A stretch of 63,968 nucleotides of DNA, filler included, from Octopus bimaculoides (GCF_001194135.2; 5 parts of 4 records of this genome joined end to end with filler, not necessarily neighbours in it), one strand, 5' to 3'. Shown: positions 12,325 to 57,400, counted from the whole stretch's first letter. Program-made: numbers and translations. Notes: generated from the sequence alone by a model not told the origin.

Positions 12325-13109
12325 CATGTATGAGTACATATGTGTATATGTCTCTATATGTTTATGTATGTACATATATGTATGTATGCATACATATATA
12401 TGTGTGTATATCTTATTAAGAATATTCTCTCTTGAGGCTCATCACATAAAGCTATAAATAAAAGCATGTTGAAAATCCCTTTTGAATCGGAAAAGTTGAA
12501 GACTACCCATGGAACTCAAACCCACATCTATCAATCTGATGGGCATTCTACCACGAGACCAATGCAATTCTTTGAATTTCTCAATCTATTTTAGAAACTC
12601 TATTTTTGCCAGCAAACATTGTATGTTATTGATATCATGGGCAGCCTTCAACATTTTCTATACAAAAGGGTTTTTCAACTTAATATTTACATGTTATTAC
12701 TTATAATATTATGTAATGTGCCTTGAGGGCCAATACTCCACAAAAGGATTTATTACTTCCAAAAAAACAATTATTTCATGTTCTTCCAAAAGTTTATAAA
12801 TTCTTATGATGTCAATACAATTCTTGCAAGCAAGAAAAAAGTTCCTAAAATGAAATAGAGGAATTTGAAAGATTGCTTTGGTCCAATGGTAAAGCACCTC
12901 TCATGTCTACAGGGGATGTGGGTTGGAATTCCAAGGGCAGCCTTTGACTTTTTCTATCCAAAAGGAGATTTGCAACCCAATATTTATGTGCTACTATTTC
13001 ATAATTTCCTGCCCAAAGAAAAAGAATTATTTCATATTCACTTAAAAGTTTATAAATTCATAGGGCAGCAAGGCCGCAGCCTCAAGGCTGAAATATATAA
13101 AAGAATAAA

Positions 13110-35209: not shown

Positions 35210-35704
35210 GGTGGGCTATAAAGGCCGAGTGCGTTTTCAACAGTATATGCCAGGAAAGCGCACAAAATGGGGGATCAAAGTTTGGAAAAGATTTGTGAAT
35301 CAAATACTGGGTACTGCTCTGGATTTTAATTTTATACTGGCAAAAGAGACAGTAATAAATCCAGTAATGTGCACAACTCTTCTATAATAATATTTTGTTG
35401 TATACCCAATTGAATATTAGCTAATGACCCATTTTCTATAGCGATGTTTGAACAAAAATTTAAATAATTTTATATTTTGTTGAATTTACCTGTAATTAAA
35501 GTCACTTTGTGACAAAAATTTTGGTATAGAATTGGTTGAGAACCTTTCGTAAATTTATCTTCCAAAAATCACATTAATATGTTTGATAAATAAAAAAGTT
35601 AGAGTTGTTTAATGAAACCAGCCTAAATTTATGATTATGTTAGAAATTAATTGAAACACATAAGGGGTGTAATTTGGTTAGAAATATGGTAACGAAAGAG
35701 TTAA
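35210..35704 (+). mobile_element. piggyBac derivative, 3' part
   Basis: Near-identical to 48790-49270. Ends tggtaacgaaagag-TTAA. Starts at a scaffold join. Confidence 0.85.
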
Positions 35705-36343
35705 GGTCCTGATTTCATACACTAGTAGGGGTTTTGACTTTTTTTTTTATAACCAGTCATTTTTTGGAGAAAAAGATTACAAGTTTAGAGAGTTAATCTT
35801 ATCCAACCAACCCATACACACCATTGCTTCACTAATGGAAGCTGCCATTTCTGTTTTTGGAACATGACTAATCTGAAATGCACCATTGATCTATTTCAAT
35901 CTGTGCAGTTTTATAATAAGTTCTCTGTACATGTGGCTGTTATAATCAACTGTGGTGTAATGGTTTACTGCCAGCTCCTTTAGAAAAGAAGCATATATGT
36001 GTCAGTTTCTATACAGGCACAAATTTGATGCAGCCTGTCTTCTATTTGCATCAATCAACAGTGGGTAGTACTATTTCATGTTTTACATTCAGCTTCTTCT
36101 GTTGGAAATAGCTTACTGCATCCTCTAGGCTTTTAGATTTTCCCACAATCTTCTCAAATGTTCCATTGGCTGCTATGACATATCAATTTGTGTCATGTTG
36201 AAGGAATGTTTCCGATGGCTAAGATTGCAAAATATTTCCATCTATCCTGCCACTGTTTGACATAAATGCTGTTCCATGTCCTAATAACTTAGTGGTTCAG
36301 CAAAGGAGGTTCATACAGTAAATACCAAACATTGAAAAGTAAT

Positions 36344-36415
36344 CTGCAGATGATGAAATCTTTCACGATGGTCTTCATTACTCTTTGCTGCTGAAGTTAT
36401 CCAGACCTGATGCAG
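36344..36415 (+). ncRNA. Box C/D snoRNA, SNORD35/snR73-like, copy 1
   Basis: Terminal stem ctgca/tgcag, C box ATGATGA, C' CTGCTGA, D CTGA. Guide TTTCACGATGGTCT pairs over 14 nt (two G-U) with conserved LSU rRNA AGACCGUCGUGAGA. Confidence 0.85.
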
Positions 36416-36765
36416 TATTGCTTTATCAAGCTTTCACAAATGAATGTGTTGAGTCAGAAAGTATATTAATTTTGCTTCATTGACAAGATTTCACCATAAT
36501 TGGGAAATGTAACAGTCTTGGATATGGAGGATTACATTTCTTGAATAATTAGTGGAAATATGAGTTTTTGCTTCTTTTTTTTTTTTTTTTTTTTTTTTTT
36601 CCCCCTTCAATTTTTGAAAATTTTCAAATTTGATATGTAGATGTGATTTTTTTTTAATGCTGAACTTGCTTGCTTGTTACAGAGGCTTGAAGTTTGATAA
36701 ATTTTACAGTCAGAAAATAAGATTTGGGAGCTGGCATTTTTATGTGCAATGACATTACAACAAAG

Positions 36766-36890
36766 GGCACTGTCATGGTATTAGCTGTCAGAAGTGAAAG
36801 TAGAACTGACAAGGAACGTTACTGCTGGTTTGAGTTGATTCTTTGGCTACTGACTAGCCGGAGCTATCTATCTGTCTGTCTATCTCACTA

Positions 36891-36923
<33 letters not shown>

Positions 36924-37313
36924 CTATCACTTGTTCACCTCTGTGACTGTAGAATTTATCAAATTAGAAAACGCAAATTTAATATAAAAATATATTTTCT
37001 GAAATTGCAAATTATTTAAAATATAAGAATATAATTTTCAGCAGAGAGAATTTATCAAAATAGAAAACAAATGAAGTTTAAAAATAATAGGATCGAGGAC
37101 TGCGCGTTCGGGACCGCTCTGTGTGTTTTCAAACGCATGGCTATAGGTGTCAAATTTGTTCCAATAACTTTCGAGTGATAGATACAGAGAGAGACAGACA
37201 GATAGCTAGCTCTGGCCAGTCATGGTATTAGCTGTCAGTAGCCAAAGAATCAACTCAAACCAGCAGTAACGTTCCTTGTCAGATTTTTCTACTTTGTCAC
37301 TTCTGACAGTGCC
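36766..37313. mobile_element. MITE with long imperfect TIRs and 8-bp TSD
   Basis: Ends GGCACTGTC/GACAGTGCC flanked on both sides by CAACAAAG. About 130-150 bp of inverted similarity. Confidence 0.8.
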
Positions 37314-37765
37314 CAACAAAGCATTAAACAACGGAAGTTCTTAAGATTTTTCTAAAAAAAATTTTCACCACAGCCTTTGAATTGATGTAAGATGGGTGTG
37401 TTTTTATGAAAAAAATTTGAAAATTTATATTTTTACACCTTGACCATCCCATTTGGTGTCAAATTTCACCAATTTTGTGGAAACTACACATGGGAGAAGC
37501 AAGAGGGTTGGTGTTAGGAAGGGTATCTGGTTGTAAAGACCCTACCAAGGCAGACATTGAAGCATGGTATAGTCTTCTACCACGCCAGCATGAAAAACAG
37601 ATGTTAACTGATGAGTAGCATACAAAACTACATCAATATACCAAATTTGAAATCACTTGGAACAAAATTGAAGTGAAAGGCAAACAGAAAATATCTGAAA
37701 TATGCTAGTGAATTAGTTTATAATAGATAAGCTTGTAATATTTTCAAATGAATATTGAAAGTAAT

Positions 37766-37837
37766 CTGCAGATGATGAAATCTTTCACGATGGTCTTCAT
37801 TACTTTTTGCTGCTGAAGTTATCCAGACCTGATGCAG
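37766..37837 (+). ncRNA. SNORD35-like box C/D snoRNA, copy 2
   Basis: One substitution from copy 1. All boxes, guide and stem intact. Confidence 0.85.
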
Positions 37838-38212
37838 TATTGCTTCATATAGCTTTCTGAAATGAATGTATGGAGTTAGAATACCTAGCATGTGTGTGTA
37901 GTTTCTGAGAAAGTATATAATTTTGCTTCACTGACAAGAGTTCATCTTAATTGTCTGAAAAATGTGTTATTGTATGTTCATTGTAAACAAACATGTATAT
38001 CACCTATTATCTTTGGAATCCTTTCATTGTCACATTCACTATTAAATTTTTACTAAGTGTAAATTGAAATATCTGATTCAAGCATTGTTGTTGAGACTGT
38101 TAGATACCACAATTTTGTAAAAATAAATTATTTCATAATATGTTAAGTATACATCAGGATGTATGGTAATTAGTGGAAATATTCTAGTGAATAAGTTTGA
38201 TGGCTTCAATAC

Positions 38213-38889
38213 TTTTGTTACCATATTTCTAACCAAAATGTGTTTCAATTAATTTCTAACATAATCATAAATTTAGTCTGGTTTCATTAAACAACTCTAA
38301 CGTTTTTATTTATCAACATATTAATGTTATTTTTGGAAGATAATTTAATGAAAGGTTCTCAATCAGTTTTATACCATAATTTTTGTCACAAAGTGACTCT
38401 AATTACAGGTAAATTCAACAAAATATAAAATTATTAAAATTTTTGTTCAAACATCGCTATAGAAATTGGGTTATTAGCTAATACTCAATTAAATATACAA
38501 CAAAATTTTATTATAGAAGAGTTGTGCACATTACTGGATTCGTCAGGTGAATTTAAACACAGAAAGACAGGTGTACCATAAAGGTATAAGTAAAATGAAA
38601 GACTGGAATCTGTCTGAAGAAAACTAGAAAATAAAATACACATACACCATCAACTAGATTAAATAAGCTCTCCCACATACGTAGATACAATAATGATTTA
38701 CAAAAGAAATTAAACAAAATTTGTCACTCTACATAATGCACATTGGAAAGTTGTTTCAACAGCCCTTCCACTAGGAGCTTTCCTTTTTTGATGAAGGCAT
38801 TCGCGACACTGCTTTTTGTGACCCTGGGTTTTTTTTCTAATTTATGGAGATCGGCTGAATTCAGAGGGATATCCCCTTGGCAGGCTTTG

Positions 38890-38921
<32 letters not shown>

Positions 38922-39960
38922 GAATAACCAGCTCTTAGTTGTGTTGCTGCATCTGCACAGAACTGCAGATGGTCGCATAGCTTTCAAGCCTGTCCCGATT
39001 TGGTATATAGTATAAACGCATTAGTAATACTCATATTTACTATATACCAAACCAGGTATCGCCACCATCGATTCCCTGATCTGCCAACTGGATAATAAGG
39101 CATCATCTGATTCAGCCAATCTACACCACCTATGTACCTGTTATAATAGACGTTCACAAATGGCGTGCCATTTTCATCCACATGTGGCTGTGCACAGGTA
39201 GACAAAATTAATCTGCCTCTTATCTCTGTATGTGGTCGCTAGCAAATTTCCTTTCTGCTGTTGAATTATTTCACCTTTTTTTTTTAATTTTGCTTTTTTT
39301 ATATCCAACGGCAGTCCTTTTCTACTAGCGATCACTGTAGCTCATGAATGTGTTGCCACAGTATCTAAATTCTCCGCAAGTTTGGCCGAACTGAAAAATC
39401 AGTCAAAAATTAATATACGGCCCTGGTTATGGTATGGAAGTGATAAATTCCAGACCACATCATACCCTAGGTCATGCTGACTTCTATAATTGTCTCTTTT
39501 GCCAGTATAAAATTCAAATCCAGAGCAGTACCCAGTATTTGATTCACAAATCTTCCAAACTTTGATCCCCCATTTTGTGGGCTTTCCTGGCATATACTGC
39601 CGGAAGCGTACTCTTCCTTTATACCCCACCATGCCCTCATCGACGGATAAGTATCTCAGGCTTGTGAAATGTTTTATATGTGTTTTGAACACAGTCAATG
39701 AGGGGTCTTATTTAAATATAGGATCAAAGTCTGGTTCTCCATGTACTGGTGTACTGCTTGTGTCTCTATGTAAATACTGAGTCAATTTCAAAAATCGTGT
39801 CCTCGTCATTATACTCAAGACATATTCATCTCCTCAGTAATTTATTATTCTGGGTAACTTTCTAATGCCCATGATAATATTTATAGCAAAATATCCTTCA
39901 ATTTCATTTAAGTGGGGAACCACAAACTGTCCTTTCTTACGCTTTGTTTACTTTTTGGGG
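38213..39960 (-). mobile_element. piggyBac (PGBD4-like) transposase relic, less deleted version
   Basis: Fragments LSVDEGMVGYKGRVRFRQYMPGKPTKWGIK, YNRYIGGVDWLNQM..RWWRYL and a decayed Cys-rich tail. The right-end sequence matches the other copies. Confidence 0.9.
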
Positions 39961-40061
39961 GCGGTTTGATAACTAAAAGGTTAGACATGAGATGGTGACT
40001 TAATTGGTATGGTTTATAATAGATGAGCTTGTTATGTTTTTATATGAATGTTGAAAGTAAT

Positions 40062-40133
40062 CTGCAGATGATGAAATCTTTCACGATGGTCTTCATTACT
40101 CTTTGCTGCTGAAGTTATCCAGACCTGATGCAG
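40062..40133 (+). ncRNA. SNORD35-like box C/D snoRNA, copy 3
   Basis: Identical to copy 1 over the 72 nt. Confidence 0.85.
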
Positions 40134-40703
40134 TATTGCTTTATATAGCTTTCGTGTGAAGTGAGCAAGTATATAATTTTGCTTCACAGACAAGATTCCA
40201 TCATGATTGAGATATGTAACATTGTGTGTTCATTGTAAACAAAGAGGTATACCACCTATCATCGTGTTGACAGGTACACTAGTCAATTTATATTCTTCTC
40301 TCTTTTGGAATCACTTGCCATTTTCGCTAAATTTTTTCCATTAATGTAAATTGAAACGTCTGATTTTAGCAAAGTCTGCTTGTCACTAGGATACAACACA
40401 TTTTTAAAAAATAAATCGTTTCATAATGCATTAGAAATTCATTGGGATATATGGTCTTAGATGTTGATACAATTCTTGAATAATTAGTGGAAATTCAGGA
40501 TCTTTTCTGTTTGCCTTCAATTTTTGAAAATCTTCAAATTTGGTATATAAATGTAATTCAAACTGAATTTGGTTCACATCTGAAATATGCTAGTAAATTA
40601 GTTTAATGACTTCAGTGCATTTATTAACATGATATGGTAATGTAATTGGTTAAGTTTATAATAGATAAGCTTGTAATATTTTCAAATGAATATTGAAAGT
40701 AAT

Positions 40704-40775
40704 CTGCAGATGATGAAATCTTTCACGATGGTCTTCATTACACTTTGCTGCTGAAGTTATCCAGACCTGATGCAG
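40704..40775 (+). ncRNA. SNORD35-like box C/D snoRNA, copy 4
   Basis: One substitution in the internal loop. Boxes and guide intact. Confidence 0.85.
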
Positions 40776-41339
40776 TATATTGCTTCATATAGCTTTCTGA
40801 AATGAATGTATGGAGTTGGAGTACCTAGCATGTGTGTGTAGTTTCTGAAAAAGTTTATAATTTTGCTTCACTGACAAGAGTTCATCTTAATTGTCTGAAA
40901 AATGTGTTATTGTATGTTCATTGTAAACAAACAAGTATACCACCAATCATCAAAAATAAGTGTTATCAGGTTCACTAGTCAATTTATATTCCCTCTTGGG
41001 AATCATTTGTCACATTCACTACTAAATTTTTACTATTGAGTGTAAATTGAAACGTCTGATTCAAGTAAAGTCTACCCATTATTGTTGAGTCTGTTGGATG
41101 CCAAATCTGAAGTCTATAATTTGTAAGAGTTAAAGCATCTTATATTTTGTAAAAATAAATTATGTATACATTGCGATGTATAGTCTTTGGATGTGGAGGA
41201 TACAATTCTTGACTAATTAGAAGTAATATTCTAGTGAATTAGTTTGATGGCTTCAATGCTTTTTTTCTTAAAAAAACAAGAGATGGTAACTTAATTGGTA
41301 AGTTTTATAATAGATGAGCTTATGAATATTGAAAGTAAT

Positions 41340-41411
41340 CTGCAGATGATGAAATAGTTCACGATGGTCTTCATTACTCTTTGCTGCTGAAGTTATCCAG
41401 ACCTGATGCAG
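41340..41411 (+). ncRNA. SNORD35-like box C/D snoRNA, copy 5
   Basis: Two substitutions just after the C box (aatagttcacg). Core guide TTCACGATGGTCT and boxes intact. Confidence 0.8.
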
Positions 41412-41424
41412 TATTGCTTTACAT

Positions 41425-42070
41425 GATCTTAATCCTTGCGCATTCAGATTACTTTGAATTAATCGTGCATTATCTTGCAACTTCGAAATTTCAATGATTG
41501 TTTATTTTAAGAATGGCATTGGTTTTAACCCTTTGGCATTTAAACTAACCAGTATCTGGTTTAACACCTACTCTACAATTTCATTCTATAAGTAATCACA
41601 TCATCAGAATGTCACTGTTACTTGATAATGCATAATTAATTAAAAAGTGTGAATAAATGGGCATTGCATTGACTGTAATCTGAAGGTAGAATATTATGGT
41701 TAGTTTAAATGTTGGAGTTATGGATTAAGTTTGAAGGGGGTGTTAAGATATCGCATTGTTTACCAAATGATATTTTTTTAGTTCTATGAAAAGTGAATAT
41801 AGGTTCTGTGTGGTATTGATCATATTATAGTTTATATAAACAGTTCAGTTTCACATATTGCATCACCTTAACATTTTGGTTACTTTGTCAAATGTAATGC
41901 TTATTTATCTTTGAATTAATCATGCATTATCTCGAAGCTTTGAAATGTCAGTGATGTGATTTATTTTTAGAATATTGTTGGGTAGGTTTAAGAGGCCAGA
42001 TCTGGCTGGTTTTAAACAAAACAAGTAGAATATTTGGATTAATATGGCCAGTTTAAATGCTAAAGGATTA
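41425..42070. mobile_element. Cluster of TTAA-type (piggyBac-like) MITE fragments
   Basis: Recurring tcaaatgtaatgcttatttat..gaattaatcatgcattatc..gccagtttaa..ctaaagg(g)ttaa. Further copies near 47445-47530, 50870-50975, 51130-51310, 52565-52735 and 54385-54570. Confidence 0.65.
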
Positions 42071-42287
42071 AATGGGAAAGATTGCCAAAGTATGTAAGAT
42101 GTGGTTTTGAATAATTAGGATACAGATTTATCCATTTGTTCTGTGATACAAACTTGTTTTAAAGTTATTTAATTTCATATCTTCCATCAAAATTTCTCAA
42201 TTTATATTCTCAATACAGCCTCATAATAAAGCATTTGCGTTTTTGATAATTTAATTAGTGTGTTTAAAAAATCTCCTTAATTTGCAG

Positions 42288-42463
42288 GCATCACCCGCAA
42301 AAGCAGAATTATAGATGTTGTATACAATGCCAGTAATAATGAGCTGGTGAGAATGAAAACTTTGGTAAAAAGTTGCATTGTAACAATTGATGGTACTCCT
42401 TTCCGACAATGGTATGAAGCTCATTATGCTCTGCCTCTGGGTAGGAAAAAAGGCGTGAAATTG
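42288..42463 (+). CDS. RPS8: 40S ribosomal protein S8 (eS8), internal exon, 176 bp
   Basis: tttgcag acceptor and gtaagt donor. Encodes [58 protein letters not shown]. Confidence 0.97.
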
Positions 42464-43259
42464 GTAAGTAATCTTGTACTCTGAACTTCAAAATTAAAAT
42501 GTGGTTGTCATCTATAGTGTTGCGATTTGTAACAACAGTTGAGTTACATGACTGCACTTATATCAAACATTGATATAGTTTTGCATGGTGATGAAAAAAT
42601 TGGATTAATGGTTTTAGCTAGTGCATTACAACCATTTACAGTTATGTAATTTTATGCCTATCAGAAGTCACAACTGACTTTTCATTATTGTTTACCTACA
42701 TGTTGACAATATATGAACGTTACAAAAACTTGAATGTCTTGAAAAGTATTCAAGTGAAGGATGGGGTTTCTCACTTGTGTTAGGCATTTAAAAGTTTTCA
42801 TACCTGAACAAAATCCAACTATACTGTAATAAATAGTATCTCAAATACTTCACCTGTTTTGTCTTGGTGTCAATACATGAGCTTGCAGAGATAGAAATCT
42901 ACTGCCACAATGCCATTTATTCCTTCACTTAAGGCGAGTACTTTCTGTATTTTGAATGTGCGTCCTGTTTTTCAAAGTGGCAAACTTGATACTGTGGCTC
43001 ACCATTCTATGCTGGTATTTCTGGAATATGCAAGTGTACTTGTCAAAGGTTGCTGTTAATCAGTGTTGATGACGGAATCAGTCATCACACCCAGCAATAT
43101 AAAAACAAAACTTTATTTATGAAAAAATCTGTATAGCAACTGGGGTCAAAATCAAAATTTGATTATGACCTTTGGGATCTTGTAATTAGTAAGGACAGTT
43201 TTTACATACCTGCATTGTTGCATATCACAGCTGACTGTACAGGGAATTGTAGTATTCAT

Positions 43260-43351
43260 TTGGAAAGAGATTGCGTGATGAATAATTAAGCCATCTTTCG
43301 GCTGAAATTTAATGTTGTACAATTTTTGAAATTCTGATAATCTCTTTCCAA
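43260..43351 (+). ncRNA. Box C/D snoRNA, SNORD51/SNORD32/snR39-like, copy 1
   Basis: 13-bp terminal stem ttggaaagagatt/aatctctttccaa, C box GTGATGA, D CTGA. Guide CCATCTTTCGG before D' CTGA complements LSU CCGAAAGAUGG. Confidence 0.85.
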
Positions 43352-43839
43352 TAAAGACTTAGGGTAAGTTAATTGACTATTTGAATCTGGAATTTTTTTT
43401 TTTTTTTTTTTTTTTTTTTTCCCCTTTTATTTAATTTCAACAAAACAAGTGGGTGTTCTTGGCTTGCTTTGCTTAGTTCATTTTCAAAGAATCAGTTTTT
43501 ATATTTTGTCATTAATTAGATATGTGTAACTAGTGACGGCAGTAAGGCCTGTCATTTTCATTCGCTAGTTAAAATAAATTACTTATACACAGAGCAGGAT
43601 TTATTGTGGTGTCTCGTCTTAGATCTTGTGACTTCATGTATTTTTGTATTTATTTTGCAGATAGTTTCTATAACACTCTTACTGCTTGTGATTTTCAGAT
43701 CCTATCATGATTTATTCTCTGTGTTCAATTTGTAGTGGTTCAATAAATTGCTGGTTTTTTTTAAATCAAAAATGTTGTTATATCAGTGAATTGAGCATGT
43801 TTGGAACAGAACTGATGACATAAGTATTACACTGGTTTT

Positions 43840-43930
43840 TGGATGGAGACTTTATGATGATTTTTTTAAAGCCATCTTTCGGCTGAACCAGAATGATGTA
43901 TAATTTTCCAAATTCTGATGGTCCCTTCCA
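43840..43930 (+). ncRNA. SNORD51-like snoRNA, copy 2
   Basis: C box ATGATGA, same guide and D', C' ATGATG, D CTGA. Different terminal stem (tggatggagac/gtcccttcca). Confidence 0.8.
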
Positions 43931-44174
43931 AATAGTTTAAAATTTTATGCTAGAGGAAGAACTTGGTAGTCACTTTATATTGTCCTCAGTTCCCTGTGTT
44001 GCATTGTTATTAAAATGGGAATTTGTTTAGAAGTCAACTGGATATAAATTAGATTCTATTTTTATATTGTTACAAGAGAGCTTTTGTGTTTTGTGGCCAA
44101 TGAGGTTGTCTTCAAATTAGGGGGAGAAATCATCTTTGTTTATACAAATACGTGTTTGAAATGTCTGTATTTTG

Positions 44175-44264
44175 CCAAAAGCAGAATGATGAACATATAA
44201 ACTGTAATTGCTAGTTGTATAGTCATGATGCCAGTATGTCATAGTTACACTGACTGCTTTTTGG
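44175..44264 (+). ncRNA. Box C/D snoRNA, SNORD46(U40/U46)-like, copy 1
   Basis: Stem ccaaaagcag/ctgctttttgg and C box ATGATGA. Guide GTCATAGTTAC-A-CTGA complements LSU GUAACUAUGAC. Confidence 0.85.
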
Positions 44265-44360
44265 TATATTTTTCTGAAACATTTCTTCCACATTTGACTT
44301 AGTTTGTTTGAACAAGAAAAAGTTTTGTCATGCTTTGTTTATTCAAATACAGTTTGCTTG

Positions 44361-44447
44361 CCAAAAGTAGAATGATGAATATATATATATATATGCTAAA
44401 TGTTTGGTCTGATACCAGTATGTCATAGTTACTTAGGCTGTGTTTGG
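44361..44447 (+). pseudogene. Decayed SNORD46-like copy
   Basis: C box and guide GTCATAGTTAC retained, but D box replaced by TTAG and terminal stem eroded. Confidence 0.7.
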
Positions 44448-44453
44448 TATGTT

Positions 44454-45850
44454 TTTGTTACCATATTTCTAACCAAATTACACCCCTTATGTGTTTCAAT
44501 TAATTTCTAACATAATCATAAATTTAGTCTGGTTTCATTAAACAACTCTAACGTTTTTATTTATCAACATATTAATGTTATTTTGTGGAAGATAATTTAA
44601 CGAAAGGTTCTCAACCAATTCTATACCAAAATTTTTGTCACAAAGTGACTCTAATTACAGGTAAATTCAACAAAATATAAAATTATTTAATTTTTGTTCA
44701 AACATTGCTATAGAAAATGGGTTATTAGCTAATATTCAATTGGGTATGCAACAAAATATTATAGAAGAGTTGTGCACATTACTGGATTCATTACTGTCTC
44801 TTTTGCCAGTATAACATTCAAATCCAGAGCAGTACCCACTATTTGATTCACAAATCTTCCAAACGTGGGCTTTCCTGGCATATATTGTCGAAAACGCACT
44901 CTGCCTTTATAGCCCACCATATCCTCATCTATAAACTGTTTTATATGTGTTTTGAACACAGTCAATGAGGGGTCTTATTATAAATAAGGGATCAAAGTCT
45001 GGTTTTCCACGTACTGCTCGTGTCTATTACATGTAGATATTGAGTTAATTTTAAAAACCGTATCCTCATCATTATACTTGAGACATATTCGTCTCCAAAG
45101 GGTTCATCACTACTCCAGTAATTTGTTATTCTAGGTAACTTTCTAATGCCCATAATATTTATGGCAAAATATGCCTTAATTTCATTCAAGTTTGTGGGAA
45201 ACCACAAACTATCCTTTTTTACNNNNNNNNNNNNNNNNNNNNNNNNNNNNNNNNNNNNNNNNNNNNNNNNNNNNNNNNNNNNNNNNNNNNNNNNNNNNNN
45301 NNNNNNNNNNNNNNNNNNNNNNNNNNNNNNNNNNNNNNNNNNNNNNNNNNNNNNNNNNNNNNNNNNNNNNNNNNNNNNNNNNNNNNNNNNNNNNNNNNNN
45401 NNNNNNNNNNNNNNNNNNNNNNNNNNNNNNNNNNNNNNNNNNNNNNNNNNNNNNNNNNNNNNNNNNNNNNNNNNNNNNNNNNNNNNNNNNNNNNNNNNNN
45501 NNNNNNNNNTCTTTTTTTTTTTTTTTGCAGTTACAGAGTTAGATTTATCAAGGTCTTCAACGGAAGATCCTTCGAGTTCTGACTCTGCTTGACAGAATAA
45601 AATTCGTAACCATTTTTTTGTCAGGATTACAAATTTTGAAAACACAACAGGATTACAAATATTGAAAAAAATCTCTCAAAATTCACAAAATTAAAAAAAC
45701 ACGTCGATCGTCATACAAAACTATAGCTGAACTGTTTACACAAATATTCACGTGTTTTCACGAATGTACTAACGAGATTTGCTTGGATATTCTCATTTAA
45801 ATATGAATAGGTGATTACGGGTGGTTTTGGGCGGTTTGGTAACGAAAGGG
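44454..45850 (-). mobile_element. Non-autonomous piggyBac inside an RPS8 intron
   Basis: Left end CCCTTTCGTTACC next to TTAA (45851-45854). Transposase remnants FAINIMGIRKLPRITNYWS and MVGYKGRVRFRQYMPGKP. Right end decayed at about 44454. Confidence 0.9.
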
Positions 45851-45899
45851 TTAAACCAGAAAAGTTTGTGCTTTGTTTAGACAAATACAATTTTATTTG

Positions 45900-45990
45900 C
45901 CAAAAGCAGAATGATGACCATATATATGCTGTAGTAGCTAAATGTTTAGCTATGGTGCCAGTATGTCATAGTTACACTGACTGCATTTGG
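45900..45990 (+). ncRNA. SNORD46-like snoRNA, copy 3
   Basis: Stem ccaaaagcag/ctgcatttgg, C box ATGATGA, guide GTCATAGTTACA and D CTGA intact. Confidence 0.85.
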
Positions 45991-46330
45991 TATAATTCTT
46001 GATGTTTTTCCTCTCCTCCTCTTCCTCAGTTGGTCTTTATTCAGGATGGGTGCAGAGTAAGCTTCCTCCAGAAATATTACCTTTTCATTCAACTTTAAGA
46101 TAGATGTTGAGGACTCCATTGAATCTAGATAGCAACAGATTTTTTTTTTTTTCTGCATAATTATTCTGAAATATTGTTCACACATTTATTATGGAGGGTT
46201 GTGCATATCATTACTTCACCATTTTTCTAATGTCTGGGTGGTGATTTTCCATGTGATGTTTGGTAGAAATCTGTTTTGTGTATAATGATTGTGACCTGGT
46301 TTAATGTATATTTTGTTAAAACCTTTATAG

Positions 46331-46460
46331 ACAGAACAAGAAGAATCTGTTCTTAACAAAGTGCGTTCACGGAAAAATCAAAGAAAATACACATTACGGC
46401 GAAAGACAGCTAAAGTTGAACCAGCTCTTCAAGAAGAATTCATGACTGGTCGATTATTAG
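46331..46460 (+). CDS. RPS8: RPS8 internal exon, 130 bp
   Basis: tatag acceptor and gtaagt donor. Encodes TEQEESVLNKVRSRKNQKKYTLRRKTAKVEPALQEEFMTGRLL, in phase with neighbours. Confidence 0.95.
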
Positions 46461-46805: not shown

Positions 46806-46898
46806 TTGGGATAGAGATTCTATGATGAATAATTAAGCCATCTTTCGGCTGAAATTTAATGTTGTACAAATTTCAAAATTCTGATAATCTCTTTCCAA
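46806..46898 (+). ncRNA. SNORD51-like snoRNA, copy 3 (last RPS8 intron)
   Basis: Nearly identical to 43260-43351 including boxes, guide and terminal stem. Confidence 0.85.
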
Positions 46899-47157: not shown

Positions 47158-47267
47158 CAAAAATCACTTCACGACCAGGTCAATATGGTAAATCCGATGG
47201 TATTGTACTTGAAGGAAAAGAACTTGAATTTTATATGAGGAAGATCAAGGCGAAGAAAGGGAAATAG
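47158..47267 (+). CDS. RPS8: RPS8 terminal coding exon
   Basis: tttgcag acceptor. Encodes (A)[35 protein letters not shown] followed by TAG. Confidence 0.97.
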
Positions 47268-47635: not shown

Positions 47636-49266
47636 CCCTTTCGTTACCAAACCGCCCAAAGCCGCCCGAAAAAAAATTTGGTTCATGTGACCAAGCTGCC
47701 CAAAACCGCCCGTAATCACCTATTCATATTTAAATGAGAATATCCAAGCAAATCTCATTAGTACATTCGTGAAAATACGTGATTATTTGTGTAAACAGTT
47801 CAGCAATAGTTTTGTACGACGGTCAACGTGTTTTTTTAATTTTGTGAATTTTGGGAGATTTTTTTCCAAATTTGTTCCTGTTGTGTTTTCAAAATTTGTA
47901 ATCCTGACAAAAAAATGGATACGAATTTTATTCTGTCAAGCAGCGAGTCAGAATTCGAAGGATTTTCCGTTGAAGACCTTGATAAATCTAACTCTNNNNN
48001 NNNNNNNNNNNNNNNNNNNNNNNNNNNNNNNNNNNNNNNNNNNNNNNNNNNNNNNNNNNNNNNNNNNNNNNNNNNNNNNNNNNNNNNNNNNNNNNNNNNN
48101 NNNNNNNNNNNNNNNNNNNNNNNNNNNNNNNNNNNNNNNNNNNNNNNNNNNNNNNNNNNNNNNNNNNNNNNNNNNNNNNNNNNNNNNNNNNNNNNNNNNN
48201 NNNNNNNNNNNNNNNNNNNNNNNNNNNNNNNNNNNNNNNNNNNNNNNNNNNNNNNNNNNNNNNNNNNNNNNNNNNNNNNNNNNNNNNNNNNNNNNNNNNN
48301 NNNNNNNNNNNNNNNNNNNNNNNNNNNNNNNNNNNNNNNNNNNNNNNNNNNNNNNNNNNNNNNNNNNNNNNNNNNNNNNNNNNNNNNNNNNNNNNNNNNN
48401 NNNNNNNNNNNNNNNNNNNNNNNNNNNNNNNNNNNNNNNNNNNNNNNNNNNNNNNNNNNNNNNNNNNNNNNNNNNNNNNNNNNNNNNNNTGAGGTTTCCC
48501 ATAAACTTGAATGAAATTAAAGCATATTTTGCCATAAATATTATTATGGGCATTAGAAAGTTACCTAGAATAACAAATTACTGGAGTAGTGATGAACCCT
48601 TTGGCGACGAATATGTCTCAAGTATAATGACGAGGATACGGTTTTTAAAATTGACTCAATATCTACATGTAAGAGAACGAGCAGTACACCAGTACGTGGA
48701 AAACCAGACTTTGATCCCTTATTTAAAATAAGACCCCTCATTGACTGTGTTCAAAGCACATATAAAACAGTTTATAGATAAGGATATGGTAGGCTATAAA
48801 GGCCGAGAGCGTTTTCAACAGTATATGCCAGGAAAGTGCACAAAATGGGGGATCAAAGATTTGTGAATCAAATACTGGGTATTGCTCTGGATTTTAATTT
48901 TATACTGGCAAAAGAGACAGTAACAAATCCAGTAATGTGCACAACTCTTCTATAATAATATTTTGTTGTATACCCAATTGAATATTAGCTAATGACCCAT
49001 TTTCTATAGCGATGTTTGAACAAAAATTTTAATAATTTTATATTTTGTTGAATTTACCTGTAATTAAAGTCACTTTGTGACAAAAATTTTGGTATAGAAT
49101 TGGTTGAGAACCTTTCGTTAATTTATCCTCCAAAAATCACATTAATATGTTGATAAATAAAAAAGTTTGAGTTGTTTAATGAAACCAGCCTAAATTTATG
49201 ATTATGTTAGAAATTAATTGAAACACATAAGGGTGTAATTTGGTTAGAAATATGGTAATGAAAGGG
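47636..49266 (+). mobile_element. Complete non-autonomous piggyBac with TTAA TSDs
   Basis: TTAA-CCCTTTCGTTACCA ... TGGTAATGAAAGGG-TTAA. Internally deleted transposase, same derivative as 44454-45850. Confidence 0.95.
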
Positions 49267-50850: not shown

Positions 50851-52015
50851 AAATTGTTAATCTAAAAGTAAATTATTCATAAAAGTCTTGAAGCTATGAG
50901 ATAATACATAGTTAATTCAAAACTGAATAAATAAGCATTGCATCTAACAGAGTAATCTGAATGCTAAAGGGTTAAGGCAGTGATTCTCAGCTGGGATCCA
51001 TGAAAAAATTTTGCCATAGATGTATTTATTGCAAGAAACGACTGTTTCTTTAACGTTTTGCGTGGTTCAACTTGCACAATACTCCAGGAAAAACAGTAAA
51101 TTTTAGAAGAAGTATGTATAAAACTAGTTTTTAACCCATTAGTATTCAGGTTAGTTCGTGAGTGTAATGCTTATTTATTCACATTGTCTTGAATTAATCA
51201 TGCATTATCTTAGCTTTGAAATTTCAATGGTGTGATTGCTTATTTTTAGAATGACATTTTAGGGTAGGTGTGAGAGGCCATATGTGGCCAGTGTGAATAC
51301 TAATGAGTTAAATATCAAATTACTTTGAGTGTCGACTACACTATCCATGACCTGTTGGGTCACCTGGAAAGTCTGCATTTCCCAACAAAGTAGTTTCATG
51401 GGTTTTTCTTTTCACATGCTTTCAACATGACATTCAAATCATGCATAAATGGCTCCTTTCCCCGGGAAAGGAAAGATTTGGCTGCTATTTCTTGCATGCC
51501 CTGTTACCATGTAACAGGTATTTCGGGTCCTTTATCACAAATAGCTGTTACTTGGTAGCAGGGCATGCTAAATAACAGCCAAATCTTTGGAGCTGAATGC
51601 ACTTAGGAAAACATTTTTCTAATTGTATTCCCTTGGGACAATCTTTTGCTTTGACTCTCAGAACTTTCAGCTTGTTTTGTTCGTTAATTTCCGTAAAAAA
51701 AATTTTTGTAAGTGACGATGTAGAGAGTGCCATTTGCACACGTTCACTCTCTCTTGCACATGTACATACAAAGATCTATGCATATGTACATGTACATACA
51801 TCTTTCACTTTAAAATAAATAGGAAATTTATGAAAATTGACGAACTCCAGAGAGTCAAAGTGAAAGGTCCCCATTCGCTTGGGAAAAAAACCATTAAAAT
51901 ATTGTGTTTAAAGAAAGCTAAAATATAAATACTTACTATACAAACTTACATTTTTGAAATCACACTCAGTTACACAATATTTCTAAATGATTACAATGTT
52001 GTGTATGTCAAGTCG

Positions 52016-53225: not shown

Positions 53226-53762
53226 CTAAGGTTGATGAAAAGTTGGGTAACATATGCAGCCTTAATGATGAGGCTAAGTACTGCTTTTATTCTGGAATAA
53301 GCATCTCATTTGTGAAATGACAAGTTTTGTTTATCTTATAAAATATTTAATTTCCAGAATGAAATGGGAAATGTTGCCAGCCCAATTTCAGAGACAGCCT
53401 TGTGTTGGTGCATTATATAAAAACAGCTATTTGAGTTATTTTGAATTCTGTAAAGTTAAATTCATAGTTACTCCATGTCCTAAACAACCATATATATGCG
53501 GCAGTACCTTTTGTTTTGAACAACTCTGATCATGAATAAATTGTGCTTTGTATATATATAGATATATATAAAGCATGATTTATTCGTGATCAGAGGCGTT
53601 CATAAACCGAGGTACTATTGTATTAAATGAATATGAGAGAGACAGGAGATAAAGTAAGATTTATTCATGATCAAAGTTGTTCAAAAACTGATGTTCTACT
53701 ATATATATATATTTATTCGAGATTTTTTTTTTTTTTTTCACTCTCCACTTAAAATGGCAAAC

Positions 53763-54619: not shown

Positions 54620-57400
54620 TTTTTGCCATAATTTTCCCTTATATTGTTTTCTTCCCCCAACACCACTTCGTGGGGTTCAGCCTCGCTAGATTGGTTTTTC
54701 ACCATTTCTCAACTCTTCTCCAACTAGGTTCCTTTTAACTGACTGAGTGCATGGTACTTTTGTAACCAACTCTCATATTACATACCCTAGGACCAGCATA
54801 CTCAGTTTACTCTTTTTCACTGTACATTTAATTCTTCTTGTGCCTAGTTTTACTCATTTCATTTGTGCTCCATATGTGTTATATCAATGGAGAAAGCTTT
54901 CTACACTTCTTTTCAATCTTCTCGTATTCAATGCTTGTTTCTCTACCTCACAATATTATTTTTCTTCTATAAGCTTCAAACATTCTACTCTTAACCCAGA
55001 GAATTAAAGCTTCCTGAGCTTTTTTCTACCCAGTTTTCATAAAACAAACGTCTCCACTTTGTACTGCAAGCAAAGTTGTTTATCAATCCATATCAAGCGT
55101 TCCCATTTCACTGACAGCAGTAAGATCTTTCTTCTTCTCCCCTAAGACTTTTGTCTAAGTTAACTGATTCTTTCTGTCAACTATCTCATTGGCATACCTA
55201 TTTTAGCACAGATTAGTTTAAATTATTGGTATGGGCTTGGTGAACTGTAAGTGGCTGAGTCCTGCTGTGCATGCTAAATTTCTTAGTGAACTTGTTTGAC
55301 AGCATTCCTGTACATAACTCATAAAAATCATCTCATTATCATTTTGAATCTGGGTTTTATCCCCATTAATGGGGGTGGCCGGATCTACCTCAATGCCATA
55401 GCAACTGCCCTTTTACCATCTTGCCCAGCTTTGGGCATCCTCCTTTCTCAAGCCAACCCTCCCAATCTCTTCCTCCACATTTTCCTCGGTCTACCTCGCT
55501 TTCGCTGTCCATTTATTTCAGACTCTAGCACCCACTTCAGAACATGCTCCTCATCCCTCCTCAATGGATGCCCATACCACTGCATTCCATTCCTATCAAG
55601 TCCTCAGTCCTTCTCAAAATTGCCATCTCTCTCAAACACCATGTCTCACTCCCATATAGCATTTCTCCCTCAATCCCTCCATTGTCTCACTCATCAGTAC
55701 CTCCATTAGCAGTTCCTCTCTTGCACTCTGTTACCACATCAACCACTATTGAAAACAACACAGATCCCTGATGCACACCAACTTTCACTGCAAACTTCTG
55801 ACAGCTCTGATCCAATTATCACTCGTCTTTACCAACTCATCTCTGCTCTCACTATTACCTGTAGTACACCTCTTTTCTTCAATGCCCACTCAATCACTTT
55901 CCTTGGAACCCTATCAAATGCCTTCTTGGATCAACGAAGCACATGTACAACTCCTCCCCCTTATCTCGGTATTCCTTCTGCAATCTCCTTACAATGAACA
56001 ATGCATTTATTGTCCCCCTTCCTGACATAAAATCAAATTGCATCTCATCCACCCCTTTCTGAATTCTCCTCTCCACCATCTTCATTGCATGCTCCAATAA
56101 CTTCACTCCTCTATACGCCCCACAACTCATTGCATCCCTCTTCCATCCAGCATGCCCTGGCAGTGCTCCATCCTCACAACAATCCCTATCTCTCCATTGC
56201 AGTTATTTCCACACTTACCAGCTGCCTTTCCTGTTTTCATTTCCTTCATTGCCTCCACTACTTCTTCCCAACTAACCCTCTCCACTGGCCCATTCACCAC
56301 AGCAACTTCTACCCTCTGATCCCATTCATAATTCCCTCCATATGCTCCTTCCAAACTCTTCCCCTGTCCTTCTCAATAAAATTCAACCTTCCGTCACTCT
56401 CCTTCATGCATCTTCCTCCTTCAACATCTCTTCCATCATTTTGAAAAATGAATTGATTTAATAAACCTAAACACTATCTGGGTTCTCATCCAGCCCGCTC
56501 AGCCTACTTCCTCTTAGATCTCACAACCACCCTCTGCACATTTCTTCATGTTATTATACCTGGTTTAAAAGACTTCCTCAAATCCGGTGCATCAATGCTT
56601 ACCAACTCCCCAACTCTTTCCCTTGTTTCTTCTTCCTTCAGTTTCCACACCTTTCTCCTCTCAACCGTTCCCTTTCTCACATGCTTTTTAACTTTCCCCT
56701 TATCCAAGTGAGCAACCACCAACCTGTACTGCAACTCACTTGGCACTGTCATCTACACCTTGTGAGATGCTTGTTAAAGGCCTTCTCCTGATCAACAAAT
56801 GTTAATTATAGTGTCTCATGCATCTTCTAACAATCTTCCTAATTAGTTGTACTATAATTCTGTTACTTTCATAACTTACTCCATCTGTTTGCTATCTCTA
56901 AAGTATACCCCTTAGAGCATCTACTTTGTTCTACTAGCAGTTAACGATCCACTCATGACTCCTCTGCTATCTGATCAACTATACAAATGATAGCCAAAGT
57001 ATCTTCAGCCTCTCAGCATTATCCTTGCTAGTCCATCTGCTTATCCTTTATATCTTTAAATGTTCTTTTAATTATATAGTTGTCGAGCACCTTGCTCTCT
57101 CTGAAATCAGTGTAGATCCTCTCCAACACACTCCTTAATCAGCAACCTTTTGAGGTAACATTTCCATACCTCTTCAACATCATGATTCATACTAACACTA
57201 CTCTGCACTCCCAAAATAGTGACCAACTTCTTACTTTCCACTTCTCTATTAAGCATATGTGAGTGGTAAGTTGTCGGACATTTCCTGAAATAAGATGTTG
57301 CAAATGGTTAGGTCATTTTATATCACATGGCCTAGCTTGCTCTCCTGTATCATAACTATAGTTATCATGATGTTCCTCAAAAAATTGCATTGAGCTCACC
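54620..57400 (-). mobile_element. Degenerate RTE-clade LINE
   Basis: RT motifs YRGVKLLEHAMKMVER, QFDFMSGRGTINALFIVRRLQ and LYMCFVD. Endonuclease/linker region has RKVWKLKEEE. Many stops. Confidence 0.85.

What the first reader, a model, noticed from the sequence alone, without database searches (positions are those of the whole stretch)
36344..41411. Five-copy array of a SNORD35-like snoRNA in a single exon-free interval
Seen: five 72-nt C/D snoRNAs differing by 0-2 nt, while their co-duplicated flanks (units of roughly 0.15-0.7 kb) are visibly diverged and interrupted by TEs. No RPS8 exon lies between them. Known: the guide matches the LSU site methylated by human SNORD35A/B (Cm4506, older numbering) and yeast snR73 (Cm2959), close to the peptidyl-transferase centre. 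In vertebrates intronic snoRNAs are almost always one per intron and U35 sits in RPL13A/RPS11. Inference: purifying selection on a dosage-amplified, polycistronic intronic snoRNA array, which needs endonucleolytic separation or hidden non-coding exons.
Basis: partly seen in the sequence, partly recalled or inferred. Interest (0 to 1): 0.75.

Follow-up and report, generated by a model that had tools for sequence, protein, structure and literature searches.

The report
Tandem SNORD35-like snoRNA array, RPS8 intron
One intron of an octopod ribosomal protein S8 gene carries five near-identical copies of a small guide RNA for a conserved methylation at the ribosome's catalytic centre, and the same intron in another octopod carries six, so the array is real and under selection but is a new example of a known arrangement.

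Summary
Five 72-nt box C/D snoRNAs lie on the + strand at 36344, 37766, 40062, 40704 and 41340. They differ by 0-3 nt pairwise. Their flanks differ by 28-56% in nine of ten pairs; c2/c4 are a recent duplicate. Their guide is identical to the Rfam SNORD35 guide consensus.

All five lie in one RPS8 intron (at least 35210-42287). tblastn, poly(A) RNA-seq (exon depth about 1300, inter-copy depth 0-6, no splice joints) and a scan for recursive splice sites found no exons between them. DNA unitigs from four runs confirm the array.

Three things are new here:
- The orthologous Argonauta hians intron holds six copies.
- Every copy in both species carries a 12-19 bp flanking stem, and the stem sequences differ between copies.
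- The downstream introns hold multi-copy SNORD38-like and SNORD46-like snoRNAs.

Purifying selection is supported, but within-species similarity also shows lineage-specific duplication and turnover. The dosage benefit and endonucleolytic release are inferred, and no data show mature snoRNAs. Several snoRNAs in one intron is a known arrangement in plants and Drosophila and is occasional in mammals. This is a new member of a known kind, of moderate interest.

The parts
36344..36415 (+). SNORD35-like box C/D snoRNA copy c1. Its core is identical to c3. Flanking stem arms lie at 36333-36343 and 36416-36428.
   Evidence: Rfam hit; exact core; flanking duplex of -16.7 kcal/mol.
37766..37837 (+). SNORD35-like copy c2, with C>T at 37805 in the D'-C' spacer. 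Sister of c4. Stem arms lie at 37755-37765 and 37838-37850.
   Evidence: The downstream flank is 94-96% identical to that of c4.
40062..40133 (+). SNORD35-like copy c3. Stem arms lie at 40051-40061 and 40134-40146.
   Evidence: The core unitig sits at 3-4 times single-copy depth in DNA runs.
40704..40775 (+). SNORD35-like copy c4, with T>A at 40742. A 2-nt insertion in the 3' stem arm weakens the duplex to -11.7 kcal/mol.
41340..41411 (+). SNORD35-like copy c5, with CT>AG at 41356-41357 just 5' of the guide. It ends 876 nt upstream of the 3' splice site.
35210..42287 (+). The part of the RPS8 intron held in this piece. The upstream exon (aa about 34-71) lies beyond the piece's edge. The acceptor CAG is at 42285-42287.
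   Evidence: tblastn; splice-site sequence; poly(A) RNA-seq depth 0-6 against about 1300 in the exon, with no splice joints.
42288..42463 (+). RPS8 (eS8) exon encoding aa about 72-130.
   Evidence: tblastn gives 84% identity to human eS8. RNA-seq depth is about 600 in each read orientation, and 1354 reads are spliced from 42463 to 46331.
46331..46460 (+). RPS8 exon encoding aa about 130-172.
47158..47267 (+). Last RPS8 coding exon, with stop codon TAG at 47265-47267.
38984..39698 (-). Decayed piggyBac-type transposase fragments inserted between c2 and c3.
   Evidence: Pfam PF13843, E 2.9e-21 and 7.4e-8.
43270..43338 (+). SNORD38/Me28S-Am982-like C/D snoRNA in the next intron, with a perfect 13-bp flanking stem.
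43849..43922 (+). Second SNORD38/Am982-like snoRNA in the same intron.
44179..44259 (+). SNORD46-like C/D snoRNA in the same intron.
44365..44447 (+). Decayed SNORD46-like copy. Box C is intact, but box D (CTGA) is replaced by TTAGG. It shows what relaxed constraint looks like at this locus.
45904..45986 (+). Second intact SNORD46-like snoRNA in the same intron.
46817..46885 (+). Third SNORD38/Am982-like snoRNA, alone in the last intron.

Best explanation
This is a tandemly duplicated family of functional box C/D methylation-guide genes of the SNORD35/snR73 type. It is hosted on the sense strand of one intron of the ribosomal protein gene RPS8 in an octopod.

Shown:
- There are five copies here and six in the orthologous Argonauta intron.
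- Each copy has box C (AUGAUGA), box D (CUGA), a 5-bp terminal stem, a C'-like box (UGCUGA) and the 14-nt antisense element of SNORD35.
- There are no exons between the copies.
- The cores are conserved against diverged flanks and across species.
- Every copy is embedded in a 12-19 bp duplex formed by the intron sequence just outside the mature ends.

Inferred:
- The guide places the first C of 28S 'AGACCGUCGUGAGA' (human Cm4506, yeast Cm2959, in the peptidyl-transferase centre) five nucleotides from a degenerate D' box (CAUU here; CAGA in one Argonauta copy and in the family consensus).
- The copies lie 0.9-6 kb from the 3' splice site. This is far outside the roughly 70-80 nt window that favours splicing-coupled assembly in mammals. 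The flanking stems most likely bring boxes C and D together so that each snoRNP assembles regardless of position.
- The snoRNPs are then freed from the excised intron or from the pre-mRNA by endonucleolytic cuts in the AU-rich spacers, followed by exonucleolytic trimming to the protein-protected ends.
- The array is kept by purifying selection on each copy, combined with continuing tandem duplication, loss and homogenisation. That combination explains the species-specific signatures shared by all copies.
For: - Identity: there are five Rfam SNORD35 hits. The local alignment shows UCACGAUGGUCUUCA identical to the family consensus. SNORD35A/B are assigned to 28S-Cm4506 in PMC8677024.
- Host and exon-free state.
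- The array is real.
- Selection: core versus flank gives Fisher p of 2e-8 to 4e-19 in nine of ten pairs.
- Orthologous array: six copies lie in the same intron of Argonauta hians, between the exons for aa 34-71 and aa 72-132. With the cores masked, nothing in the intron aligns between the species except exons and other snoRNAs.
- Terminal stem: it is 100% paired in 11 copies, with two compensatory double changes in the Argonauta copy whose core starts at 14306.
- Flanking stems: all ten snoRNAs of this gene have box-adjacent duplexes of -11.7 to -18.7 kcal/mol, within the lowest 2% of an intronic background. The six Argonauta copies reach -15.4 to -20.7 kcal/mol, with at least three different arm sequences.
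- Decay control: a SNORD46-like copy that lost box D has degenerated.
- Turnover: core differences are 0-3 within this octopod and 10-20 between species. c2/c4 here, and the Argonauta copies at 13774 and 15218, are recent duplicates.
Against: - There is no direct evidence that any copy yields a mature snoRNA. Only poly(A)-type RNA-seq and assembled contigs were available, and no small-RNA library could be found.
- Rfam scores are below the curated gathering score (30.8-33.3 against 36).
- The D' box is degenerate.
- The endonuclease step is inferred from topology alone.
- The RNA-seq did not cover 35210-35729, 36556-36934 or 38871-38924, and the upstream end of the intron lies outside the piece.
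- Whole-unit fold energies are not better than those of shuffled sequence, as is usual for C/D snoRNAs.
- Full core identity between c1 and c3, whose flanks are near random, suggests that homogenisation and not only selection keeps the cores alike.
Confidence: 0.6

Rival explanations
1. sno-lncRNA outcome. After splicing and debranching, exonucleases stop at the outermost snoRNPs, so the main product is a long RNA of about 5 kb capped by c1 and c5, or shorter ones between neighbouring copies. Few or none of the internal copies become free snoRNAs.
For: This is the documented fate of two snoRNAs in one mammalian intron (PMC11028025; PMC4234469). No endonuclease for this locus is known.
Against: Internal copies c2-c4 are as conserved as the outer ones, including guide, boxes and stems. 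In the RNA contigs of run X48, inter-copy DNA has the same low depth (2-6) as intron DNA outside the array. Run X17 has none around c2. These libraries are poorly characterised, so this is weak evidence.
Confidence: 0.2
2. The one-snoRNA-per-intron rule still holds. Cryptic non-coding exons or recursive (zero-length exon) splice sites split the interval so that each copy is released in its own lariat.
For: Arrays such as SNORD115/116 are organised this way. Transcripts with cryptic exons could be unstable and rare.
Against: Three poly(A) RNA-seq runs give exon depth of about 1300 and inter-copy depth of 0-6, with no GT..AG joints. The only joints belong to repeats. No AG|GTRAGT site with a pyrimidine tract exists in this intron or the Argonauta one. 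The Argonauta gene model has no exon there.
Confidence: 0.05
3. The copies are non-functional duplicates. Their identity reflects recent duplication or gene conversion, with at most one working copy.
For: c2/c4 diverge as little in the flanks as in the core. All copies share species-specific substitutions, which shows homogenisation or recent common origin.
Against: Nine of ten pairs have 28-56% flank divergence against 0-4% in the core. The variable core sites fall only in spacer positions. Boxes, guide and stems are intact in all 11 copies of the two species. There are compensatory stem changes. A truly decayed snoRNA copy in the same gene looks quite different.
Confidence: 0.07
4. Each copy is an independent transcription unit with its own promoter inside the intron, as for many nematode snoRNAs, so no processing from the host intron is needed.
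For: The units were duplicated with several hundred bases of flank. A TATA-like string (TTTATAATAG) lies about 45 nt upstream of c2-c5.
Against: That string is absent from c1 and from all the Argonauta flanks. Upstream conservation ends with the stem arm. The sequence is AT-rich, so TATA-like strings are expected by chance. Flanking stems are a precursor-processing feature.
Confidence: 0.06
5. The array is an assembly artefact, a collapsed or expanded repeat in a draft assembly with N gaps.
For: The piece contains N gaps at 45223-45509 and 47996-48489.
Against: Copy-specific spacers are each present at single-copy depth, and the shared core at 3-4 times that depth, in four DNA runs from at least three studies. 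An independent chromosome-scale Argonauta assembly shows the same arrangement.
Confidence: 0.01

Closest known systems
SNORD35A/B (human U35) and yeast snR73; Rfam RF00211
   Same: It is a box C/D architecture with a 5' antisense element identical to the family consensus (UCACGAUGGUCUUCA). The element sits directly upstream of the D' position, so the fifth-nucleotide rule selects the same 28S cytidine (Cm4506 in human, Cm2959 in yeast). It is hosted by a ribosomal protein gene.
   Different: The host is RPS8, not RPL13A or RPS11. There are five to six tandem copies in one intron instead of one per intron. D' is degenerate (CAUU). Scores are 3-5 bits below Rfam's gathering score. The RNA is shorter (72 against about 86 nt). 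It also has an invariant second element next to box D (AGUUAUCCAGA) that is not in the family consensus.
Intronic snoRNA gene clusters of rice and Drosophila (Liang et al. 2002; Huang et al. 2004, 2005; as cited in PMC3089462 and PMC2246290)
   Same: Several snoRNAs lie on the sense strand of a single host intron with no exons between them, often as isoform families produced by tandem duplication. Release must involve more than exonucleolytic trimming of a debranched lariat.
   Different: According to PMC3089462, the Drosophila clusters are described as box H/ACA clusters. The rice clusters are in a plant, where polycistronic processing is the norm. This array is a homogeneous C/D family in a lophotrochozoan ribosomal protein gene, and it is conserved between two octopod families. 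I could not read the primary papers.
Mammalian sno-lncRNA loci and two-snoRNA introns (for example SNORD49B/A in SNHG29, and the PWS region)
   Same: Two or more C/D snoRNAs lie in one intron.
   Different: In mammals these are pairs, usually arise by alternative splicing, and yield snoRNA-capped long RNAs. Here five to six copies are constitutively in one intron, and all are under constraint as guides. Whether sno-lncRNAs form here is untested.
SNORD115/SNORD116 and SNORD113/114 tandem arrays
   Same: They are tandem arrays of near-identical C/D snoRNAs produced by unit duplication, with concerted evolution.
   Different: Those arrays keep one snoRNA per intron, with non-coding exons between the copies. 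They are mostly orphan guides in imprinted non-coding hosts. This array has no intervening exons, has a canonical rRNA target, and sits in a protein-coding housekeeping gene.
Splicing-independent assembly of intronic C/D snoRNPs aided by external stems (Hirose, Shu and Steitz 2003, cited in PMC3089462; Xenopus U16/U18 endonucleolytic processing, noted in PMC11028025)
   Same: The snoRNAs lie far from the 3' splice site and are flanked by complementary intron sequence that extends the terminal stem.
   Different: That mechanism was shown for single snoRNAs in vertebrate cells. Here it is only inferred from sequence, for ten snoRNAs in this gene and six in Argonauta.

Membership tests
Box C/D snoRNA | Box C (RUGAUGA) near the 5' end and box D (CUGA) near the 3' end. 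| tested here: met
   AUGAUGA and CUGA are invariant in all 5 copies here and all 6 in Argonauta.
Box C/D snoRNA | A short terminal stem that brings boxes C and D together. | tested here: met
   The 5-bp stem CUGCA/UGCAG is 100% paired in 11 sequences. One Argonauta copy has two compensatory double changes and one G-C to G-U change.
Box C/D snoRNA | Internal C' and D' boxes. | tested here: inconclusive
   A C'-like UGCUGA (UGUUGA in one Argonauta copy) is conserved. D' is degenerate: CAUU here, CAUA or CAGA in Argonauta. Degenerate D' boxes are common in this class.
Box C/D snoRNA | Accumulates as a stable RNA of about 60-100 nt bound by fibrillarin, NOP56/58 and SNU13. | not testable with these tools
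   No small-RNA library could be listed. Poly(A) RNA-seq shows only 0-6 reads over the copies.
SNORD35 / snR73 (Rfam RF00211) | Score at or above Rfam's gathering threshold of 36 bits. | tested here: not met
   Scores are 30.8-33.3 bits here and 28.0-33.9 in Argonauta. E-values are still small: 4e-4 to 2e-3 in 25 kb and 3.3e-6 locally.
SNORD35 / snR73 (Rfam RF00211) | An antisense element complementary to 28S around Cm4506/Cm2959, placed so that the target pairs with the fifth nucleotide upstream of D'. | tested here: met
   UCACGAUGGUCUUCA is identical to the consensus and in the same register. The pairing to AGACCGUCGUGA and the fifth-nucleotide count are my reading from established rRNA sequence. 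The octopod's own 28S was not available.
SNORD35 / snR73 (Rfam RF00211) | The target cytidine is 2'-O-methylated in a snoRNA-dependent way. | not testable with these tools
   This needs RiboMeth-seq or primer extension on octopod 28S.
Intronic snoRNA cluster (two or more snoRNAs in one intron) | The copies are on the sense strand of a single intron with no exon between them. | tested here: met
   tblastn; RNA-seq depth and joints; no recursive splice sites; the same arrangement in the Argonauta gene model. About 950 nt of the interval was not covered by RNA-seq.
SNORD115/116-type array (one snoRNA per intron of a repeated non-coding host) | Spliced exons separate every copy. | tested here: not met
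   There are no exons or splice joints between the copies.
sno-lncRNA locus | The inter-snoRNA intron segment accumulates as a stable non-polyadenylated RNA. | tested here: inconclusive
   The RNA contigs of X48 and X17 show no enrichment, but the library types are unknown and contig depth is a poor measure.

The most novel reading that the evidence does not exclude
Octopods, and perhaps molluscs more widely, routinely express C/D snoRNAs as true polycistronic arrays inside single introns of ribosomal protein genes. They would release them by a splicing-position-independent pathway: flanking stems direct snoRNP assembly and an endonuclease cuts the spacers. No such pathway has been characterised for C/D arrays in animals. 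On this reading, the copy number of a peptidyl-transferase-centre methylation guide is held at five to six by selection in two lineages that have turned over all the individual copies.
Probability: 0.25. Interest if true: 0.55.

Novelty: new member of a known kind. Interest (0 to 1): 0.4.

Why it matters
Animal snoRNA biology is built largely on the vertebrate rule of one snoRNA per intron, with release by exonucleolytic trimming of the debranched lariat. A constitutive array of five to six C/D snoRNAs in one intron cannot be resolved by trimming alone. It is conserved in position between two octopod families, and every copy carries a long flanking stem. It therefore gives a clean natural substrate for asking how animals release internal snoRNAs from an intron, and whether sno-lncRNAs form as a by-product.

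The locus also dates host-gene relationships. SNORD46 and SNORD38-type guides sit in RPS8 from human to molluscs. The SNORD35-type guide was found in RPS8 only in the two octopods, and not in a gastropod (two species), a bivalve or a brachiopod. This is a useful datum on snoRNA mobility.

Cephalopod snoRNAs are essentially unannotated. These copies score below Rfam's threshold, so automatic pipelines would miss them.

Tried and rejected
The RNA-seq test therefore had to be run in three pieces and leaves about 950 nt uncovered.
- A search for small-RNA (miRNA-type) libraries holding the core found none, so mature ends and copy-specific expression could not be tested.
- Whole-unit RNA folding gave z-scores of -0.8 to +0.2, which is uninformative. 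The stem signal appears only when the box-adjacent flanks are compared with an intronic background.
- A single consensus structure for the external stems could not be written on the 11-sequence alignment, because the register differs between flank types. Only the 5-bp terminal stem was counted.
- I looked for flank orthology between this octopod's copies and the Argonauta copies, to decide between an ancestral array and parallel expansion. Nothing outside exons and snoRNAs aligns.
- I considered recursive splicing and found no candidate sites.
- I considered independent promoters. The only TATA-like string is not shared by c1 or by Argonauta.
- I tried to find the target of the second conserved element (AGUUAUCCAGA) from remembered rRNA sequence. 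The best partial match is 18S 'UGGAUAACU', which is not a known methylation site, so I leave the target open.
- The primary papers on rice and Drosophila intronic clusters were not held.
- An nhmmer search with the 11-copy profile found no further or decayed SNORD35-like copies in the piece or in the Argonauta locus.

Full report
**What is in the sequence**

An Rfam scan of the piece (35210-60535) gives five + strand matches to SNORD35 (RF00211) at 36345, 37767, 40063, 40705 and 41341. Scores are 30.8-33.3 bits, against a gathering score of 36, with E-values of 4e-4 to 2e-3. An exact-string search places five 72-nt cores at 36344-36415, 37766-37837, 40062-40133, 40704-40775 and 41340-41411.

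Each core reads CUGCAG-AUGAUGA (box C), then AAUC, the antisense element UUUCACGAUGGUCU, a spacer, UGCUGA (a C'-like box), AGUUAUCCAGAC, CUGA (box D) and UGCAG. Copies c1 and c3 are identical. c2 has one change (37805), c4 has one (40742) and c5 has two (41356-41357). All four changes lie outside the boxes, the terminal stem and the core of the guide.

**The flanks**

The copies were duplicated together with their surroundings. The basic unit is about 640 bp: spacings c3-c4 and c4-c5 are 642 and 636 bp, and unit-to-unit identity is 69-75% including the conserved block. The c1-c2 and c2-c3 intervals are enlarged by insertions. These include decayed piggyBac-type transposase fragments (Pfam PF13843, E 2.9e-21) and a second element also present at 35210-35725 and 44453-44918.

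I aligned 120 nt upstream and 240 nt downstream of the conserved block for each pair. Mismatches among aligned columns are 28-56% for nine of the ten pairs, against 0-3 of 72 in the core (Fisher one-sided p from 2e-8 to 4e-19). The exception is c2-c4, with 7% flank divergence, 2 of 72 in the core and p = 0.13. That pair is simply a recent duplicate.

The array is not an assembly artefact. In the DNA unitigs of four runs from at least three studies, the c3-c4, c4-c5 and post-c5 spacers are each present at single-copy depth. The shared 88-nt core unitig is at 3.0-4 times that depth.

**Host gene and organism**

tblastn with human eS8 finds three exons on the + strand. Their limits follow from the splice-site sequence and from 1354 RNA-seq reads spliced from 42463 to 46331. 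The exons are 42288-42463, 46331-46460 and 47158-47267. No match to residues 1-72 exists in the piece even at E = 10, so the upstream exons lie beyond the piece's edge. The five copies share the interval 35210-42287 of one intron.

The encoded eS8 fragment is 97% identical to eS8 of Argonauta hians and at most 79% identical to other molluscs.

**Are there hidden exons?**

Three poly(A)-type RNA-seq runs of the same species were laid on 35730-36555, 36935-38870 and 38925-43390. The RPS8 exon has a depth of about 600 in each read orientation. Unique DNA between and around the copies has 0-6. The only local peaks and 'joints' belong to dispersed repeats: reads are 95-99% identical, occur in both orientations, and run on into unrelated sequence. 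No GT..AG joint lies between any two copies.

A scan for recursive splice sites (AG|GTRAGT behind a pyrimidine tract) found none in this intron or in the Argonauta one. About 950 nt could not be tested (35210-35729, 36556-36934, 38871-38924), because the read tool refuses stretches with long simple repeats. Within these limits, the 'hidden exon' escape is rejected.

**The orthologous locus**

The Argonauta hians RPS8 gene (L001) has exons for aa 34-71 at 12787-12900 and for aa 72-132 at 16711-16893. The 3.8-kb intron between them contains six SNORD35-like copies, whose cores start at 13174, 13774, 14306, 15218, 15907 and 16377. It also contains one SNORD38/51-like snoRNA. The array therefore occupies the same intron in two octopod families.

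With the cores masked, nothing in these introns aligns between the species except exons and the other snoRNAs. Neutral sequence is saturated, yet the cores keep 72-87% identity. The C box, guide, C'-like box, the element AGUUAUCCAGA and the D box are all invariant. The Argonauta copy at 14306 has replaced the terminal stem CUGCA/UGCAG with UAACA/UGUUG. That gives two compensatory double changes and one G-C to G-U change, and the stem is 100% paired in all 11 copies. This is good evidence that individual copies are under selection as RNAs.

**Selection is not the whole story**

Core differences are 0-3 within this octopod, 0-6 among five of the Argonauta copies (14-17 for the sixth), and 10-20 between species. 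All copies of a species share that species' substitutions in the spacer positions. Flanks are alignable within but not between species. Both arrays contain very recent duplicates: c2/c4 here, and the Argonauta copies at 13774 and 15218.

The arrays have therefore been rebuilt by duplication and loss since the two lineages split. Gene conversion may have contributed too: c1 and c3 are identical in the core although their flanks are close to random. That both lineages nevertheless hold five to six copies in the same intron is the only, circumstantial, support for a dosage requirement.

The conserved block is about 95 nt, not 72. The 11 nt before and the 11-13 nt after each core are conserved because they pair: 5'-GAAAGUAAU with AUUGCUU(U/C)-3', after a one-base bulge. 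This extends the terminal stem to 13-17 bp. c2 and c4 turn a G-U pair into G-C.

The same holds for all ten intact snoRNAs in this gene, with duplex energies of -11.7 to -18.7 kcal/mol, within the lowest 2% of 3000 random intronic position pairs. It also holds for the six Argonauta copies, at -15.4 to -20.7 kcal/mol with at least three unrelated arm sequences. The structure is thus kept while the sequence changes.

The copies end 876 nt to about 6 kb from the 3' splice site. Published work on vertebrate intronic C/D snoRNAs (Hirose et al. 2003, cited in PMC3089462; splicing-independent processing noted in PMC11028025) suggests a role for such external stems. I infer that they let each snoRNP assemble independently of its distance from the branch point.

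**How the copies would be released**

Exonucleolytic trimming of a debranched lariat can free at most the outer ends of an array. Two snoRNAs in one mammalian intron give a snoRNA-capped long RNA, a sno-lncRNA. Either the internal copies are separated by endonucleolytic cuts in the spacers, or they remain in such long RNAs.

The equal conservation of the inner and outer copies favours the first. The available RNA contigs show no enrichment of inter-copy sequence over the rest of the intron. Those libraries are poorly described, and no small-RNA data could be found. The endonuclease step is inferred, not shown.

**Wider context in the same gene**

The next intron (42464-46330) contains the following:
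- two SNORD38/Me28S-Am982-like snoRNAs (43270, 43849);
- two SNORD46-like snoRNAs (44179, 45904);
- one decayed SNORD46-like copy that has lost box D (44365-44447).

The last intron contains a third SNORD38-like copy (46817). Human RPS8 also hosts SNORD46 and SNORD38A (PMC6418160).

SNORD46-like or Am982-like snoRNAs were found in the RPS8 genes of Biomphalaria and Potamilus. In Potamilus, three Am982-like copies lie in one intron of about 18 kb. The SNORD35-type guide was absent from the RPS8 loci of Haliotis, Biomphalaria, Potamilus and Lingula. Its residence in RPS8 is therefore derived, at least among the taxa I could sample.

**Comparison with what is known**

The RNA works like SNORD35/snR73. 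Its antisense element is identical to the Rfam consensus and in the same register. SNORD35A/B are the guides for 28S-Cm4506 (PMC8677024). On my reading of the conserved rRNA sequence, the fifth-nucleotide rule selects the first C of AGACCGUCGUGAGA, which is yeast C2959. Formal Rfam membership fails by 3-5 bits, D' is degenerate, and there is an extra conserved element next to box D with no identified target.

The arrangement belongs to the recognised class of 'intronic snoRNA clusters' (Figure 1 of PMC11028025). These are known from rice and Drosophila, where PMC3089462 describes them as H/ACA clusters. It differs from SNORD115/116-type arrays, which keep exons between copies. Cephalopod snoRNAs have so far only been counted by Rfam homology (PMC6962438).

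**Verdict**

- The feature is a new member of a known kind.
- Interest is moderate.

Noticed in passing
window 43270-43338, 43849-43922, 46817-46885: Three SNORD38/Me28S-Am982-like C/D snoRNAs share the guide GCCAUCUUUCGG. Two lie in the same intron as the SNORD46-like copies and one lies alone in the last intron. They are much more diverged from each other (75-80%) than the SNORD35-like copies are, and each has a 13-bp flanking stem.
   Followed up: partly
window 44179-44259, 44365-44447, 45904-45986: There are two intact SNORD46-like snoRNAs plus a tandem third copy that keeps box C but has lost box D (CTGA replaced by TTAGG) and carries a (TA)n expansion. The third copy is a decayed pseudogene.
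   Followed up: partly
DNA unitigs laid on window 40115-40153: In all four DNA runs, a single-copy-depth unitig continues from the core into a downstream flank (AGAAATGAATGTGTGGAGTTAGAATACCTCACATG) that matches none of the five copies. It may be a sixth copy outside the piece, perhaps in the unseen upstream part of the intron, or a divergent allele.
   Followed up: no
all 11 copies; window 40112-40122 in c3: The element AGUUAUCCAGA, directly upstream of box D, is invariant in both species. This suggests a second functional guide. It would pair with UCUGGAUAACU, and I could not identify a target.
   Followed up: partly
L001 15601-15696, 17477-17580, 18088-18194, 18573-18667, 19609-19716, 20046-20124: In Argonauta the SNORD38/51-like family is amplified to at least six copies. 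One sits inside the intron with the SNORD35-like array and five sit in the next intron. Rfam flagged only three of them.
   Followed up: no
L004 22356-22432, 29236-29312, 31160-31237: In the bivalve Potamilus streckersoni, three Am982-like snoRNAs lie in one RPS8 intron of about 18 kb, between exons near 17.3 kb and 35.6 kb. Several snoRNAs in one intron may therefore be common in mollusc RPS8.
   Followed up: partly
window 35210-35725, 38184-38540, 44453-44918; 38984-39698 and 44759-44965 (-): There are three copies of a repeated element (88-91% identical) and decayed piggyBac-type transposase ORFs (PF13843) in the RPS8 introns. Both N gaps (45223-45509, 47996-48489) sit inside such repeats.
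   Followed up: partly
window 53510-53610 and 51480-51580: These near-perfect hairpins match unrelated plant and animal miRNA families on both strands, well below the gathering scores. They look like inverted-repeat (MITE-like) elements, not miRNA genes.
   Followed up: no
window 55894-56354 (-): The ORFs read like fragments of a retroelement reverse transcriptase (for example ...FDFMSGRGTINALFIVRRLQ...). They lie downstream of RPS8 and were not checked against any library.
   Followed up: no
runs X33 and X34: Two 'termite gut metagenome' metatranscriptome runs hold 100% of the sampled words of the octopod RPS8 exon. This looks like cross-sample contamination or index bleed.
   Followed up: no
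run X51, organism E: A different species holds the SNORD35-like core with at least two different upstream and two different downstream flanks. The core unitig is at about 2-4 times the depth of the flank unitigs, which suggests a multi-copy array there too.
   Followed up: partly
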